Notes under the pieces: generated by a model
Databases searched by the model: none
The model's input: only the letters and a program-made list of their open reading frames with translations
Told to the model about the DNA's origin: nothing
Assembly (NCBI GenBank): GCA_002269645.1
Contig: NIVC01002263.1
Span: 124,500 to 188,499 of the forward strand
Source: Macrostomum lignano
Taxonomy: Eukaryota
Direction: 5' to 3'
Length of the DNA stretch: 64,000 nucleotides
Translations under genes and position numbers: made by a program
Shown here: piece after piece, positions 24,131 through 59,766 of the stretch
How positions within the stretch are numbered: position 1 is the first letter of the stretch
Layout of the letters: every line of letters starts with the position of its first letter

Positions 24131-27100
24131 TTACTTAGCAGATGTTCCCGGAAGCAGTCCGGCCTCCTTCGCCAGGAAGTGGAAGTACGAGTCCTGCTTA
24201 GCCAGCAGGTCCCGAGGAGGCGCGAACTCTCGAACCCGACCGCTGTCCAGCACCATCACCCGATCCGAGTCCATGATGGTGGCCAGGCGATGGGCGATGA
24301 TAATCACGGTGCTGTCGGCGAACTGCTGTCTCACGGTGGCCATGATCAGCGAGTCGGTCTCCAGGTCGACAGCGGCCGTGGCTTCGTCCAGCACGAGGAG
24401 TCGACTGCGCCGCATGAGCGCTCTGGCCAGACAGACGAGCTGGCGCTGTCCTACCGACAGGTTGGTGCCGCCCTCTCCGCACTCGTGCGCCAGTCCCGCT
24501 GACAGACCGCGAGCCCAGCTGGACAGGTGCGCCGCATCCAGAGCAGCCCACAGCTCCTCGTCTGTGCGCTCATCGAACGGGTCCAGGTTCGATCTGAGAC
24601 TCCCGCTGAACACAGTCGGCTCCTGCGGCAGGATGGTCAGAGCTGAGCGCAACGAGTGCAGGCCCAGCCGGTCGATTCGGACTCCGTCCACTTCGATGTG
24701 GCCAAAGGTCGACTCGATCAGACGGAACAGGCCCAGCGTGAGGCTGCTCTTCCCTGCTCCAGTTCGACCCACGATGCCCACCTTGTGACCCGGCTCAAAG
24801 CTCACGCTGATGCCCTGAAGCACCAGATCGAGTCCCGGTCGATAGCGAGTGGCGTAGTTACAGAACTCGACTCGACCTCTCGAAGGCCAGCCAGAGGGAG
24901 GCAGCGAGTCCGTTGTCCACGGCGCCTCCGTCTCCAGGTTTGAGTACTCGTCCAACCGTTCCACAGCCACTGAGTTTGTTTCTAGCTCTGTAAGTTGACG
25001 AACCATCCAGTTAAGGGCGTCAGATATTTGTAGAGCATACGACACCGAGAGTCCAACGAGACCGGGAGTGAGCGAGTCGCGACCAAGGACCGCTAGCAAA
25101 GCGGCAATCACCACTGCAGCTGTTCCAATAAGTTCTAGTCTGAAGCCGAGCCACCTGTTTGAAGCCAGCTTTAGGAAATAAAACCTGCAAAAAGATTTTT
25201 TACATTTAGATTATAAACTATTGGTGTAAGCGCTTGAAACAATAACAAACAATAAACTTTACAGTTTAAAAAAATCAAATAAACACAAATGCTTCTAACC
25301 TTGAATTGTTATCAACTCGATAGTCTGATATTCCGACAAACCGTTGCTGCTGACGGAACGCTCGAATGACCGCCGCGCCAGCGATGGACTCGCTGAAGTT
25401 TGTGAGTATCGGAGATCGCGATCTCGAGTCCAAACGACGGCTTTGCCGAGAGATGGGCAGGTAGAAAACCTGAATACCTGCGTAGATAATGCCGAGGGGA
25501 ACTACTGCGGCAAGAAATATTGGCGTCGTGTACGAAATGACAACTATGCAAGACACCGTGGCCATGAAGCACTCTAAAAAATCGTTTATTATCATCGGCA
25601 GCTCTCGATCAACAACTTCCATGTCCTTGCTGAACCTGTTAACGATTCGACCAGTCGGTGTGGTATCGAAGAAACTCATCGGAACTCGAAACAGACGAGT
25701 CAGCAAAGACTTGTGGATTGAACGAGATGCTCTCAGTGCGGAGTAGACCCCCATTACAGCATATATACCAACAAGGACAACAATTCCTACTCCGAAGATA
25801 CCGTAAATGCTGAGGTAGTAGTCATTTATGTCTCGAAGGTATGCAGAGTTGTTCAGGTTTCCAGTGACGCTAGCATTCGAAAACAGCGGGTCTGAAGTCC
25901 AAGTGGACAGCCACACGCTGCTGGCAACGTTGACAACGGTGTAAGCGAGATGCGCCATTATGGTCATTAGAACCAGATGATATCCACGAGCTGCGATGTA
26001 AAATACATACGACTTAAGAGACACGCTTCCGGACTCCATTGTCTCCTCGTCAATCAACCTTCCGGATTGCTCAGCAGCCTTCCTGGTACCGTCCACATCT
26101 TCATCACGCGATGGTAGCTTCTCAGATGTTAGTTGGCTGATCCTGCAACAGAAATTTGAAAGCATGCATGCGTTGACAACGAGCGAGCTCTGGTTTTTTG
26201 TACCAGTATGTTTGAGCAGAAAACCCTCCGGGTAAATTACTTAGACGTTTGGCGCACAATCGAAGGCCTCTTCGAGTCAAGTCTGTCGGCAGTGTCGGAG
26301 CAGTGGCTGTTTACTGAGCTGGACATCTGACGGACGTGATGAGGTGGTGGAGACTGACTTGGAGACGTTGCAACCACAGCCGGACTCTCTGCACATACTT
26401 CGTGAGCAGAGCTTGTGCAGCTCGCGAGTCTCTGCAAGATCCTCGCTTTCTCCGCCGCCAACTCTTCGTCTTCTTCTTCTTCCTCTGGGGCTGCCGCGGC
26501 GATCTCTGCGATCGAGACGCTGACGTCGCGAGATCTGCTGGCTCGCTTCCGCTCTCCGTCATGTAGGAAGAACTCCTTCAGGAAACTCGCGAACGGTCCA
26601 TCGTGATCCAGCAGATGCTCGTAGCTGCCCTGCTCGCTGATGCGACCGTTGTCAATGACGACAATCTCGTCTACGTGAGGCAACCAGTGAATGCCGTGAG
26701 TGACGAGAATTCGAGTCTTGTCACGAAGAAGACCAGACTTTCCAATCACCTAAAATGTACCAGTTTATCCTTAGGTTTTACCAACAATTAACAATACAGT
26801 AAGCAACTACGAGCTATTGTATCCATCTTTGATTGCAGACAATAGAGGCTCTGAATCATTATGCTGACCTCGTGGAAGAGCTTCTTGCCGACATGCGAGT
26901 CCACGGCTGCCAGAGGATCGTCCAGTAGGTAGATGTCGCTGTCTTGATAAACGGCCCTCGCCAGGCTCACTCGCTGCTTCTGTCCTCCAGACAGGTTGAT
27001 CCCGCGCTCTCCGATCTCAGTCGCATCGCCCGCAGTCAGCAGCTGCAGGTCCTTTTCGAGCTGACACGCGCGCAATGCTTCATCGTAGCGAGCTTGGTCG

Positions 27101-59029: not shown

Positions 59030-59766
59030 CTGATCGACCCAGTGCTTTTGTGAGAATGAAACTGGATCGTATTTCTGCAATGTGCTATGTTTAGACGTAC
59101 AACGACTTACAAAGTTATGTAGAGTTTTTGAGTTATATATTGTAGAAAGTGTCTGATTTTTCAATATTAGCGTAGAACTTCTAAAGTTGACAAATATTTG
59201 CTTTGAACTGGATAGAACTGTAGTATGGTATTTAAAATATAAGCAGTCCGCACAGCAATGCCAATAATCTTTGGAAGCCAAGTTACGAGCTAACCTATTA
59301 ATATATAGCCTGAAAATCTTCCTAACAAAGCCTTAAAGTCGTCTGTATCGTTTCAAAATGTTGTTAAAATCGCTGAAACTCGTGCTTTGGTGCTTATTTT
59401 GGTTGAAAACTTTCAAATTCCATTTACGATTTGACTGATCGTCTCTTCAGTTGCTATTCGTTTTGGCTGTCATTCTTTGCAGCGCATTGAAAGTGCCTCC
59501 TGTAATTTTTTATACTGTCATGATGGCTACTTATATGGAGCACAAGGCTATTTAGTTGTCAGTCAATGGGAGTTTAGGGGCATGGTCTTGCTTGCGGCCA
59601 AGCCAAATCGAGCGCTTGTATTTCGGAACTGAAAGAAGGCATCCACACTGAAAGATGGTATTGATATACTAGCTTACAACTCGAAGGATTAACAAAGTTT
59701 GGACATAGACACAGTTTAAGCACATACGTATTGGCTGCATTAACGGATCATTAGGCATAACATATA

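What the first reader, a model, noticed from the sequence alone, without database searches (positions are those of the whole stretch)
24131..59100. Three ABCC paralogues are homogenised in TMD0/L0, late NBD1 and NBD2 but diverged in TMD1 and TMD2
Seen: three blocks are almost identical among all copies, introns included. Block 1 is TMD0/L0 (A ~29079-30193, B ~39484-40599, C 42468-43592). Block 2 is late NBD1 plus its intron (A ~26530-27170, B ~35862-36500, C ~45495-46135). Block 3 is NBD2 (A ~24135-24960, B ~33295-34105, C ~58200-59025). Between them, TMD1, the NBD1 Walker A exon and TMD2 differ at many residues, and their introns do not align by eye. Known: TMD1 and TMD2 form the substrate pocket of MRP1-type transporters. 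Inference: region-limited gene conversion keeps a shared engine while specificity domains diversify.
Basis: partly seen in the sequence, partly recalled or inferred. Interest (0 to 1): 0.72.

Follow-up and report, generated by a model that had tools for sequence, protein, structure and literature searches.

The report
Patchwise gene conversion among flatworm ABCC transporters
Three neighbouring, intact MRP1-type transporter genes of the flatworm Macrostomum lignano are old duplicates that keep copying three stretches (introns included) onto one another, a clean but not unusual case of gene conversion between neighbouring gene copies.

Summary
Three intact 14-exon ABCC1/MRP1-like genes sit in Macrostomum lignano DNA: A 24131-30332 (-), B 33284-40733 (-) and C 42311-59029 (+). 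They share three blocks at 98.4-99.2% nucleotide identity, introns 2-4 and 11 included. The blocks are TMD0 plus the L0 lasso, NBD1 from the Q-loop into the linker, and all of NBD2. Everything between them is anciently diverged: dS is 0.02-0.05 in the blocks and saturated outside, and the other introns do not align.

Block edges are sharp and differ between pairs. Differences are non-randomly clustered (p<5e-4). Fourfold-site GC is 66-68% in the blocks and 42-47% elsewhere, the expected mark of long-running GC-biased conversion. A second public assembly shows the same mosaic in copy A.

Interlocus gene conversion is therefore well supported. The adaptive reading (shared engine, diversifying specificity) is only partly supported. 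The diverged TMDs are under strong purifying selection (dN/dS about 0.1) and substrate-pocket residues do differ. However, TMD0/L0 is not an engine, half of NBD1 is not homogenised, and a neutral model in which conversion simply stops once copies have diverged too far is not excluded.

This is a new member of a known kind.

The parts
24131..30332 (-). Gene A: intact 14-exon ABCC1/MRP1-like gene, 1634 aa. Exons: 30332-30291, 30193-30020, 29907-29782, 29692-29555, 29439-28627, 28542-28446, 28345-27837, 27755-27668, 27595-27523, 27420-27294, 27180-26869, 26749-26241, 26142-25300, 25184-24131.
   Evidence: Splice-aware model guided by M. lignano proteins P0122 and P0121. All 13 introns are GT..AG and there is a single terminal stop. 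Pfam finds TMD0_ABC, 2x ABC_membrane and 2x ABC_tran. The best solved relative is bovine/human MRP1, E=0.
33284..40733 (-). Gene B: intact 14-exon paralogue, 1634 aa, in tandem with A. Exons: 40733-40692, 40599-40426, 40313-40188, 40098-39961, 39844-39032, 38537-38441, 38355-37847, 37752-37668, 37591-37513, 37417-37291, 36512-36201, 36081-35567, 35460-34627, 34337-33284. Introns 5, 10 and 13 are enlarged (494, 778 and 289 nt).
42311..59029 (+). Gene C: intact 14-exon paralogue, 1629 aa, head-to-head with B (start codons 1.6 kb apart). Exons: 42311-42352, 42468-42641, 42754-42879, 42969-43106, 43223-44011, 44103-44199, 44277-44785, 44857-44944, 45047-45119, 45206-45332, 45484-45795, 45915-46429, 57025-57870, 57976-59029.
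   Evidence: The intron 12 donor (AG|GTAGGT) and acceptor (CCAG|G) are in the same phase as in A, and the acceptor is homologous to A's.
29079..30190 (-). Block 1 in A: exons 2-4, introns 2-4 and the first 360 nt of exon 5. This encodes TMD0 and the L0 lasso, aa 15-280. The 5' edge lies within about 3 nt of the intron 1/exon 2 junction.
   Evidence: 99.0% identical to C and 98.7% to B. dS 0.036-0.046. Introns 2-4 are 97-100% identical.
39484..40602 (-). Block 1 in B.
42465..43592 (+). Block 1 in C. It ends at a 21-nt indel inside exon 5.
28876..29078 (-). A/B-only extension of block 1 (B 39281-39483), covering the L0 tail, aa 281-346. C is unrelated here: 95 of 102 variable sites have the pattern A=A'=B, C different.
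   Evidence: A/B dS 0.00 against 1.12 for comparisons with C.
26530..27184 (-). Block 2 in A: the last 2-4 nt of intron 10, exon 11, intron 11 and the first 219 nt of exon 12. This encodes the NBD1 Q-loop, LSGGQ signature, Walker B, D-loop and H-loop plus the start of the linker, aa 731 to about 906.
   Evidence: 99.1-99.2% identity. dS 0.017-0.034. Intron 11 is 98-100% identical.
35862..36514 (-). Block 2 in B.
45480..46134 (+). Block 2 in C.
26299..26529 (-). A/C-only extension of block 2 (C 46135-46365), covering the linker, aa about 907-989. 109 of 117 variable sites have the pattern A=A'=C, B different.
   Evidence: A/C dS 0.055 against saturated values for comparisons with B.
24131..24954 (-). 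Block 3 in A: the last 820 nt or so of exon 14, encoding all of NBD2 (aa about 1358-1634). For the A/C pair, similarity continues into the 3'UTR to about 24093-24041.
   Evidence: 98.4-98.8% identity. dS 0.035-0.050.
33284..34104 (-). Block 3 in B. Similarity to A ends at the stop codon.
58206..59029 (+). Block 3 in C.
46460..56961 (-). Young LTR retrotransposon with Ty3/gypsy gene order, inserted antisense in intron 12 of C, 30 nt after the donor. LTRs are at 46460-47659 and 55763-56961 (1 mismatch in about 1200 nt; ends TG..CA). The 4-bp target-site duplication AGGT is at 46456-46459 and 56962-56965. It does not interrupt the coding sequence.
   Evidence: Pfam finds Retrotrans_gag plus zf-CCHC, RVT_1 plus RNase H, and rve, on separate minus-strand ORFs. 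The element was never printed or assembled as a whole.

Best explanation
A, B and C are ancient duplicates of an MRP1-type (long ABCC) transporter in a Macrostomum lignano gene cluster. Recurrent non-allelic (interlocus) gene conversion has repeatedly overwritten three segments of 0.64-1.3 kb in all copies. In this process, recombinational repair of a break in one copy uses a neighbouring paralogue as the template, without crossover. A and B are in direct orientation and C is inverted.

Because genomic DNA is the template, the internal introns (2-4 and 11) are homogenised along with the exons. Long-term conversion has raised GC at silent sites in the blocks (GC-biased conversion).

Outside the blocks the copies are now too different for recombination to use one another as template: about 25-40% nucleotide divergence in the exons, and introns that no longer align. 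Those parts therefore evolve independently under purifying selection. Each gene keeps its own TMD1, Walker A half of NBD1, linker and TMD2, and so its own substrate pocket.

Shown here: the mosaic, its statistics, intact genes, the GC shift, and reproducibility of copy A's mosaic in a second assembly. Inferred: the repair mechanism, that conversion is still going on, and what set the block borders in the first place.
For: - dS is 0.017-0.050 in the blocks and saturated outside (pS 0.71-0.82).
- Introns 2, 3, 4 and 11 are 97-100% identical; all other introns score 14-64%.
- Identity drops from about 99% to about 60% within tens of bases. The edges are pair-specific: A=B only at 28876-29078, and A=C only at 26299-26529 and in the 3'UTR.
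- Permutation tests give p<=5e-4.
- Fourfold-site GC is 66-68% in the blocks and 42-47% in unconverted exons (Fisher p 1e-9 to 1e-11). In the pair-specific extensions, the two participating copies are more GC-rich than the excluded copy.
- All three reading frames and all 39 introns are intact.
- Contig NIVC01002441.1 of assembly GCA_002269645.1 is collinear with the window at 97-99.5% identity. It carries a distinct version of A (A') with the same mosaic.
- A and A' differ by 1.5% in block 1 but by 0-0.5% in the unique TMD parts. At 6 of the 17 differing sites, one version carries the base found in B and/or C.
- Residues 144, 759 and 1443 show states shared across paralogues but differing between genome versions.
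- The blocks are 0.64-1.3 kb and each is flanked by unique sequence. Each block keeps copy-private variants. This is not what collapsed repeats look like.
Against: - No reads were available, so assembly or polishing effects inside the repeated blocks cannot be formally excluded. The Mlig_3_7 contig actually ends inside B's NBD2 block, which shows that these repeats do trouble assemblers.
- The pattern of paralogues alike within an assembly but different between assemblies (residue 144) could also arise from polishing with multi-mapped reads.
- No orthologous cluster from another Macrostomum species could be retrieved, so the classical test (paralogues grouping by species in the blocks but by gene elsewhere) was not done.
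- Two of the 5' block edges fall within 2-4 nt of acceptor splice sites, and one 3' edge falls at a stop codon. A purely random choice of tract endpoints does not predict this.
Confidence: 0.87

Rival explanations
1. Selection-shaped modularity. Conversion is tolerated or favoured in TMD0/L0, the NBD1 C-terminal part and NBD2. This keeps common trafficking or interaction and ATPase modules co-adapted across the family. Selection removes conversion tracts that enter TMD1 or TMD2, so that each paralogue keeps a distinct substrate pocket.
For: - The TMDs show dN/dS of about 0.07-0.11 with saturated dS, so they are long-maintained distinct sequences.
- Pocket residues differ among the paralogues. 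The K332 equivalent is M/V/K, H335 is H/H/Q, Y440 is F/F/L and F594 is F/F/T. K332 is required for LTC4 binding in MRP1 (PMC10353158).
- Between the near-identical pair A and D, differences are enriched at pocket positions (4/14 against 18/584, p=0.001; within 3 residues, 10/72 against 12/526, p=7e-5).
- Three block edges coincide with coding-feature edges.
- The NBD1 signature and Walker B together with all of NBD2, which form the consensus ATP site, lie wholly inside the blocks.
- MK571-sensitive MRP-like efflux exists in living M. lignano (PMC3826144).
Against: - TMD0/L0 is not an engine part.
- The Walker A half of NBD1 is left out of the homogenised set.
- Among A, B and C, pocket positions are not significantly more variable than the TMD background (8/14 against 43%).
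- The A-versus-D test is post hoc and uses deposited gene models from another genome version.
- No test for positive selection is possible with saturated dS and three sequences.
Confidence: 0.3
2. Neutral, homology-limited mosaic. Conversion needs long stretches of near-identity. Segments that happened to escape conversion early diverged past that threshold and are now mechanically excluded. Segments that kept converting stayed identical, which is a positive feedback. On this view the domain pattern is historical accident plus the presence of introns that no longer align, not selection for modularity.
For: - Very sharp borders with completely unalignable neighbouring introns.
- Borders at intron/exon junctions are expected if heterologous introns stop heteroduplex extension.
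- Pair-specific tract ends and a graded zone at the 5' side of block 3 (dS 0.4-0.7 over codons 1320-1400) point to many events of differing length.
- Models of interlocus conversion reproduce mosaic divergence in tandem paralogues through variable effective conversion rates within genes (10.1101/2025.10.29.685298).
Against: - TMD0 is normally the least conserved ABCC domain, yet it is homogenised here.
- The long exons 7 (509 nt) and 13 (843 nt) would have been good recombination substrates, yet they diverged.
- The pocket enrichment of A-versus-D differences is not predicted.
Confidence: 0.5
3. Assembly or polishing artefact. The near-identical blocks result from repeat collapse, chimeric joins or consensus polishing with reads from several paralogues.
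For: - The public Mlig_3_7 contig breaks inside B's NBD2 block, and its end is riddled with 1-bp insertions.
- At residue 144, all copies are uniform within an assembly but differ between assemblies.
Against: - The blocks are only 0.64-1.3 kb, far shorter than long reads, and each is bracketed by unique sequence.
- They are not identical (0.8-1.6% differences, including copy-private variants).
- Block edges differ between pairs.
- A distinct sequence version of A in another assembly has the same mosaic with the same borders.
- Deposited C-type and D-type models carry the same block sequences joined to their own TMDs.
- All reading frames and splice sites are intact.
- A GC shift at silent sites cannot be produced by misassembly.
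Confidence: 0.04
4. Recent partial duplications or unequal crossovers (NAHR) that created chimeric genes once, rather than recurrent non-reciprocal conversion.
For: A and B are direct tandem repeats, so unequal crossing-over is possible. Sharp borders are also typical of crossover junctions.
Against: - There are three separate blocks per gene, each shared by all three copies, with copy-specific sequence retained between them. That would need many precisely paired double crossovers.
- C is inverted relative to A and B, so single crossovers would invert the interval.
- Gene order and exon structure are undisturbed.
- The differing tract ends per pair and the GC shift indicate repeated events.
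Confidence: 0.05

Closest known systems
Interlocus gene conversion producing mosaic divergence in three tandem HMA4 metal-pump genes of Arabidopsis halleri (10.1101/2025.10.29.685298)
   Same: Both involve three clustered paralogues of a membrane transporter. Effective conversion rates vary within the genes, giving alternating homogenised and diverged segments. Exon/intron structure matters for the pattern.
   Different: The HMA4 copies are recent duplicates under positive selection for dosage. Here the duplicates are ancient (saturated dS outside the blocks), one copy is inverted, and the diverged parts are whole functional domains with different pocket residues.
GOT1p1/GOT1p2 paralogues of the copepod Tigriopus californicus: islands of divergence in the face of ongoing gene conversion (PMC3728101)
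   Same: Both show a mosaic of high- and low-divergence regions between paralogues. That paper proposes that persistent islands can mark regions selected for new function.
   Different: That case is a soluble enzyme and a two-copy system studied with population samples. No population or cross-species data exist for the present locus.
Vertebrate MRP1/ABCC1 (bovine and human cryo-EM structures such as 5UJA and 6UY0)
   Same: Same architecture, TMD0-L0-TMD1-NBD1-TMD2-NBD2, at about 39-41% identity over the full length. NBD1 is degenerate (Walker B followed by D) and NBD2 is consensus (Walker B followed by E). The TM16/17 pocket residues R1196, N1244, W1245 and R1248, and W553, are conserved.
   Different: The K332, Y440, T550, M1092 and Y1242 equivalents are replaced in some or all copies. 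Only C keeps K332. The genes have 14 exons with introns of about 100 nt, whereas vertebrate ABCC1 has about 30 exons (my own knowledge). The substrates are unknown.
Long-lasting concerted evolution of mammalian gene pairs and of Caenorhabditis paralogues (PMC2720389, PMC3966223)
   Same: These papers describe stretches of homogeneity between paralogues maintained by ongoing conversion, facilitated by high identity and proximity. Only their abstracts were seen (search listing).
   Different: They are genome-wide surveys. Judging from those abstracts, neither describes an ABCC cluster or this domain-wise pattern.

Membership tests
Long ABCC / MRP1-type ABC transporter | Domain order TMD0 - L0 - TMD1 - NBD1 - TMD2 - NBD2 in one polypeptide | tested here: met
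   Pfam finds TMD0_ABC at residues 22-153, two ABC_membrane and two ABC_tran domains. The protein aligns end to end with bovine MRP1, E=0.
Long ABCC / MRP1-type ABC transporter | Walker A, signature and Walker B motifs in both NBDs, with a degenerate NBD1 (Asp after Walker B) and a catalytic Glu in NBD2 | tested here: met
   In the translated models, NBD1 has [17 protein letters not shown] and IYLLDDP (D, not E). NBD2 has [17 protein letters not shown] and LLVLDEAT.
Long ABCC / MRP1-type ABC transporter | Closest relatives are ABCC1/2/3 rather than other ABC subfamilies | tested here: met
   The top database hits are MRP1/ABCC1-3 from animals. The top PDB hits are MRP1, ABCC2, ABCC3 and then YCF1.
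Long ABCC / MRP1-type ABC transporter | ATP-dependent export of organic anions or glutathione conjugates | not testable with these tools
   The only evidence is indirect: MK571- and probenecid-sensitive dye efflux in living M. lignano (PMC3826144). That activity has not been assigned to these genes.
Interlocus (non-allelic) gene conversion / concerted evolution | Silent-site divergence between paralogues much lower in some segments than in flanking segments of the same genes | tested here: met
   dS is 0.017-0.050 in the blocks and saturated outside.
Interlocus (non-allelic) gene conversion / concerted evolution | Homogenisation includes non-coding sequence, which rules out protein-level constraint and cDNA-mediated exchange | tested here: met
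   Introns 2, 3, 4 and 11 are 97-100% identical and the others 14-64%. For A/C the similarity extends into the 3'UTR.
Interlocus (non-allelic) gene conversion / concerted evolution | Statistically significant clustering of identical sites with discrete breakpoints (GENECONV-type test) | tested here: met
   Permutation p<=5e-4 for all pairs on CDS and on third codon positions. p<=2e-4 for A/B and A/C on polymorphic sites; B/C is not significant on polymorphic sites alone.
Interlocus (non-allelic) gene conversion / concerted evolution | Different segments support different relationships among the copies | tested here: met
   A=B with C different at 28876-29078. A=C with B different at 26299-26529 and in the 3'UTR. 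All three are equal in the core blocks.
Interlocus (non-allelic) gene conversion / concerted evolution | In converted segments, paralogues within a genome are more alike than orthologues between species | not testable with these tools
   No orthologous locus from another Macrostomum species could be retrieved. The only proxy is residue 144, which is L in window A, B and C but V in all copies from other annotations. Residues 759 and 1443 show states shared across paralogues. An alternative explanation by polishing is possible.
Interlocus (non-allelic) gene conversion / concerted evolution | GC enrichment at silent sites of converted tracts (GC-biased gene conversion) | tested here: met
   Fourfold-site GC is 66-68% against 42-47%, p 1e-9 to 1e-11. 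Introns 2-3 are 46-48% GC, against 24-44% for introns outside the blocks. However, block introns 4 and 11 (34-38% GC) fall within that range.

The most novel reading that the evidence does not exclude
The cluster (A, B, C and a fourth gene D just outside the window) works as a modular transporter family. Conversion holds a common TMD0/L0 module and the consensus ATP site identical across all members. Selection keeps conversion out of the pocket-forming helices. As a result, even the near-identical pair A and D differ mainly at substrate-contact residues (equivalents of Y440, Y1242, N1244 and R1248). In other words, the borders of the conversion tracts would themselves be an adaptation for diversifying xenobiotic specificity.
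Probability: 0.25. Interest if true: 0.6.

Novelty: new member of a known kind. Interest (0 to 1): 0.4.

Why it matters
This is an unusually clean, domain-resolved example of interlocus gene conversion in an animal detoxification-type transporter family. The genes are intact, the tract borders are sharp, and there is a GC-bias footprint.

It has practical consequences. Gene trees, orthology calls and dS-based dating of M. lignano ABCC genes will mislead unless the blocks are analysed separately. Short-read mapping, RNAi, in situ probes or CRISPR guides placed in the blocks will hit all copies.

If the borders prove to be selected, the locus would be a tractable system in a transgenic-ready flatworm. 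It could address how conversion and selection divide a multi-domain protein into shared and diversifying modules.

Tried and rejected
- Homologue searches with the NBD2 exon alone and with a profile of the diverged TMD1 to early-NBD1 segments returned only distant hits at about 40-60% identity. Neither found Macrostomum proteins. Only the full-length query found them. Cross-species orthologues for per-block trees could therefore not be obtained.
Independent genomic DNA was obtained only for copy A and the tail of B (L001).
- The B' fragment at the end of that contig has many 1-bp insertions and was judged too noisy to use.
- I asked whether pocket residues are more variable than other TMD residues among A, B and C. 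They are not significantly so (8/14 against 261/611).
- cDNA-mediated conversion was considered and rejected, because introns are homogenised.
- Protein-level constraint as the cause of the blocks was considered and rejected, because silent sites and introns are identical.
- Disruption of C by the retrotransposon was considered and rejected. The insertion is intronic, and joining the flanks restores an 89-nt intron whose acceptor is homologous to A's.
- No paper in the searchable library links M. lignano ABC transporters to gene conversion.

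
Full report
**Source and gene content.** The window is flatworm DNA. A full-length query built from copy A finds Macrostomum lignano proteins at 92-95% identity (P0121, P0122) and 63% identity (P0123). The next hits are animal MRP1/ABCC1-3 proteins at about 40%. Contig NIVC01002441.1 of the public M. lignano assembly GCA_002269645.1 is collinear with window 33858-15599 at 97-99.5% identity.

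I built splice-aware models using those proteins and a vertebrate MRP1 as guides. All three copies are intact. Each has 14 exons in the same phases, all 39 introns are GT..AG, and each has a single terminal stop. The products are 1634, 1634 and 1629 aa. A (24131-30332) and B (33284-40733) lie in tandem on the minus strand. C (42311-59029) is on the plus strand, head-to-head with B.

Pfam finds TMD0_ABC, two ABC_membrane and two ABC_tran domains. The best solved relatives are bovine and human MRP1, E=0. NBD1 is degenerate (IYLLDDP) and NBD2 has the catalytic Glu (LLVLDEAT). These are long, MRP1-type ABCC genes.

- Block 1: A 30190-29079, B 40602-39484, C 42465-43592, about 99% identical.
- Block 2: A 27168-26530, B 36500-35862, C 45496-46134, 99.1% identical.
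- Block 3: A 24954-24150, B 34104-33294, C 58206-59019, 98.4-98.9% identical.

Identity falls from about 99% to about 60% within tens of bases. The edges are pair-specific. A and B stay identical for a further 200 nt after block 1 (A 28876-29078), where C is unrelated. A and C stay identical for a further 230 nt after block 2 (A 26299-26529) and for 40-90 nt of 3'UTR, where B is unrelated.

Introns 2, 3, 4 and 11 are 97-100% identical. Every other intron scores 14-64% in global alignment, which means it does not align.

In protein terms, block 1 is residues 15-280 (TMD0 and the L0 lasso). Block 2 is residues 731 to about 906 (NBD1 from the Q-loop through the signature, Walker B and H-loop into the linker). 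Block 3 is residues about 1358-1634 (all of NBD2).

Amino-acid identity for A-B, A-C and B-C is 99/100/99% in block 1, 98/100/98% in the NBD1 C-terminal part and 99/99/99% in NBD2. It is 74/62/54% in TMD1, 63/59/53% in the NBD1 N-terminal part, 50/70/40% in the linker and 76/75/65% in TMD2.

**Is it more than chance or constraint?** Nei-Gojobori dS is 0.017-0.050 in the blocks. It is saturated everywhere else (pS 0.71-0.82, dS above 2 or undefined).

The longest identical runs in the coding alignment are 248-386 nt, against a permutation maximum of 75 (p<=5e-4). The same holds for third codon positions alone. A GENECONV-style test on polymorphic sites gives p<=2e-4 for A/B and A/C.

Silent sites and introns are homogenised, so protein-level constraint cannot explain the blocks. 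Introns are included, so cDNA-mediated exchange is excluded. The genes are therefore old duplicates with recent, region-limited sequence exchange.

**A footprint of the mechanism.** GC at fourfold-degenerate sites is 66-68% in the blocks and 42-47% in the unconverted exons of the same genes (Fisher p 1e-9 to 1e-11). In the two pair-specific extensions, the two copies that share sequence are more GC-rich than the copy left out. Block introns 2-3 are also more GC-rich than non-block introns, although block introns 4 and 11 are not. This is what GC-biased gene conversion acting over a long time predicts. Misassembly cannot create it.

**Assembly artefact?** I could not examine reads, but several results argue against an artefact.

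- The blocks are only 0.64-1.3 kb and each is flanked by unique sequence.
- They are not identical, and they contain copy-private variants.
- Their edges differ between pairs.
- A second, distinct version of copy A (A', 0-1.5% different) in another public assembly has the same mosaic with the same borders.
- Deposited C-type and D-type gene models carry the same block sequences joined to their own TMDs.

There is one caution. The Mlig_3_7 contig ends inside B's NBD2 block, and its end is noisy. The repeats do trouble assemblers.

**Is the exchange still going on?** A and A' differ at 1.5% of sites in block 1 but at 0-0.5% in the unique TMD segments. At 6 of the 17 differing sites, one version carries the base found in B and/or C.

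At the protein level, residue 144 is L in window A, B and C, but V in A', in both D versions and in two C versions from other annotations. Residues 759 and 1443 show the same two states distributed across different paralogues.

This is the signature of concerted evolution. Polishing with multi-mapped reads could mimic it, so I treat ongoing conversion as likely but not shown.

First, C's intron 12 contains a roughly 10.5-kb LTR retrotransposon at 46460-56961. Its LTRs differ at 1 of about 1200 positions and have TG..CA ends. It is flanked by a 4-bp AGGT target duplication. Its gag, RT-RNase H and integrase ORFs lie antisense to C. It sits 30 nt after the donor. Joining the flanks restores an 89-nt intron whose acceptor is homologous to A's, so C's coding sequence is untouched.

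Second, the cluster is probably larger. Two deposited read-through models (P0328, P0329) join a C-type gene to an A-like gene, D (the P0121 type). The joining peptide matches window ORFs at 60423-63560 at 89-94% identity. A fourth paralogue therefore very probably lies just beyond position 64000 on the plus strand. Those models come from a diverged version of the locus, so this is an inference.

**The adaptive half of the interpretation.**

Evidence for it:
- The diverged TMD segments have dN/dS of about 0.07-0.11, so they are maintained, functional differences.
- I mapped the MRP1 substrate-pocket residues listed in PMC10353158, plus T550, which I added from memory of the MRP1 structure papers. 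The K332 equivalent is M/V/K in A/B/C. H335 is H/H/Q, L381 is F/F/L, F385 is F/C/F, Y440 is F/F/L, T550 is I/V/L, F594 is F/F/T and Y1242 is A/S/A. W553, R1196, N1244, W1245 and R1248 are invariant.
- K332 is required for LTC4 binding in MRP1, and only C retains it.
- Between the near-identical pair A and D, 4 of 14 pocket positions differ against 18 of 584 other TMD positions (p=0.001). Within three residues of a pocket position the counts are 10/72 against 12/526 (p=7e-5).

Evidence against it, or not fitting it:
- TMD0/L0 is not an engine component.
- The Walker A half of NBD1 is not homogenised.
- Among A, B and C, pocket positions are not significantly more variable than other TMD positions (8/14 against 43%).
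- The A-versus-D test is post hoc and rests on gene models from another genome version.
- A neutral model, in which conversion persists only where identity stayed high and stops at heterologous introns, gives the same picture. It would also explain why two 5' borders sit within 2-4 nt of acceptor sites.

**Comparison with what is known.** Mosaic divergence under interlocus gene conversion is an established pattern. Examples are the three tandem HMA4 genes of Arabidopsis halleri (10.1101/2025.10.29.685298), the GOT1 paralogues of Tigriopus with islands of divergence (PMC3728101), and surveys in mammals and Caenorhabditis (PMC2720389, PMC3966223; abstracts only). I found no paper describing it for M. 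lignano ABC transporters. MRP-like, MK571-sensitive efflux has been shown in the living worm (PMC3826144).

This locus is thus a new, very clean member of a known kind. Its practical importance is that trees, dating, probes and guides for these genes must treat the blocks separately.

**Verdict.** Gene conversion is well supported (confidence 0.87). The adaptive modularity reading is plausible but unproven (about 0.25-0.3). Interest is moderate (0.4).

Noticed in passing
46460-56961 (LTRs 46460-47659 and 55763-56961; TSD AGGT at 46456-46459 and 56962-56965): A young LTR retrotransposon with Ty3/gypsy gene order (gag with zinc knuckle, RT-RNase H, integrase, on separate minus-strand ORFs) lies in intron 12 of gene C, antisense to it. 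The LTRs are 99.9% identical. It enlarges the intron from 89 nt to about 10.6 kb without touching the coding sequence. There is no other copy in the window.
   Followed up: partly
beyond 64000 (inferred); intergenic matches at 60423-63560: The deposited read-through models P0328 and P0329 join a C-type gene to a fourth, A-like paralogue, D (the P0121 type). The joining peptide matches window ORFs downstream of C at 89-94% identity. Compared with A, D is 97% identical in TMD1 and 95% in TMD2, and it has a different TM17 (SDYLKWLVHE in [11 protein letters not shown] in A). The A-versus-D differences are enriched at substrate-pocket positions (p=0.001).
   Followed up: partly
59765-60997: A roughly 1.23-kb element is bounded by 235-bp inverted repeats (96.6% identical). 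It appears to be flanked by TA on both sides. It encloses an ORF (60429-60857) whose homologous stretch in P0329 begins with an NPxE-like motif (NPVE). In P0328, a weakly similar stretch (31% identity over window 60369-60692) is preceded by LPPYSPFINPAE. This looks like a deleted Tc1/mariner-type DNA transposon.
   Followed up: partly
546-901, 8482-8903, 10733-11025, 11313-12254, 13639-14274, 15084-15878, 18443-18962, 19681-19989: The left third of the window has a dense series of tandem-repeat arrays: (TAGA)89, a 50-mer x8, (CCAA)73, an 84-mer x11 (built from a 20-mer sub-repeat), (CAGA)159, a 14-mer x57, (AGT)174 and a 21-mer x15. Several of them lie in or near the MFS transporter gene.
   Followed up: no
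1898-4114 (+): A single 738-aa ORF matches the amiloride-sensitive sodium channel (ASC/ENaC/DEG) family, Pfam PF00858, E=4e-44. It appears to be intronless over this span.
   Followed up: no
about 17200-21000 (+): A major facilitator superfamily (MFS_1) transporter gene lies downstream of A. The ORFs at 17558-18235 and 20187-20951 match PF07690, and the gene is annotated in the collinear Mlig_3_7 contig. Its introns hold the (AGT)n and 21-mer arrays.
   Followed up: no
40692-42352: B and C are transcribed divergently, with start codons only 1.6 kb apart, so a shared bidirectional control region is possible. Exon 1 (14 codons) has diverged in all three genes ([14 protein letters not shown] in [15 protein letters not shown] in [15 protein letters not shown] in C). 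Block 1 begins exactly at the intron 1/exon 2 junction.
   Followed up: partly
L001 1-600 (Mlig_3_7 NIVC01002441.1 contig end) against window 33284-33858: The public Mlig_3_7 contig terminates inside B's NBD2 block. Its last roughly 600 nt carry many single-base insertions. This suggests the homogenised blocks caused a contig break in that assembly.
   Followed up: partly
23929-24034 against 24057-24164: There is a short direct duplication (about 106 nt, 80% identical) spanning the end of A's coding region and 3'UTR. Part of it also matches the end of C's coding region and 3'UTR (58996-59073, 84%).
   Followed up: no
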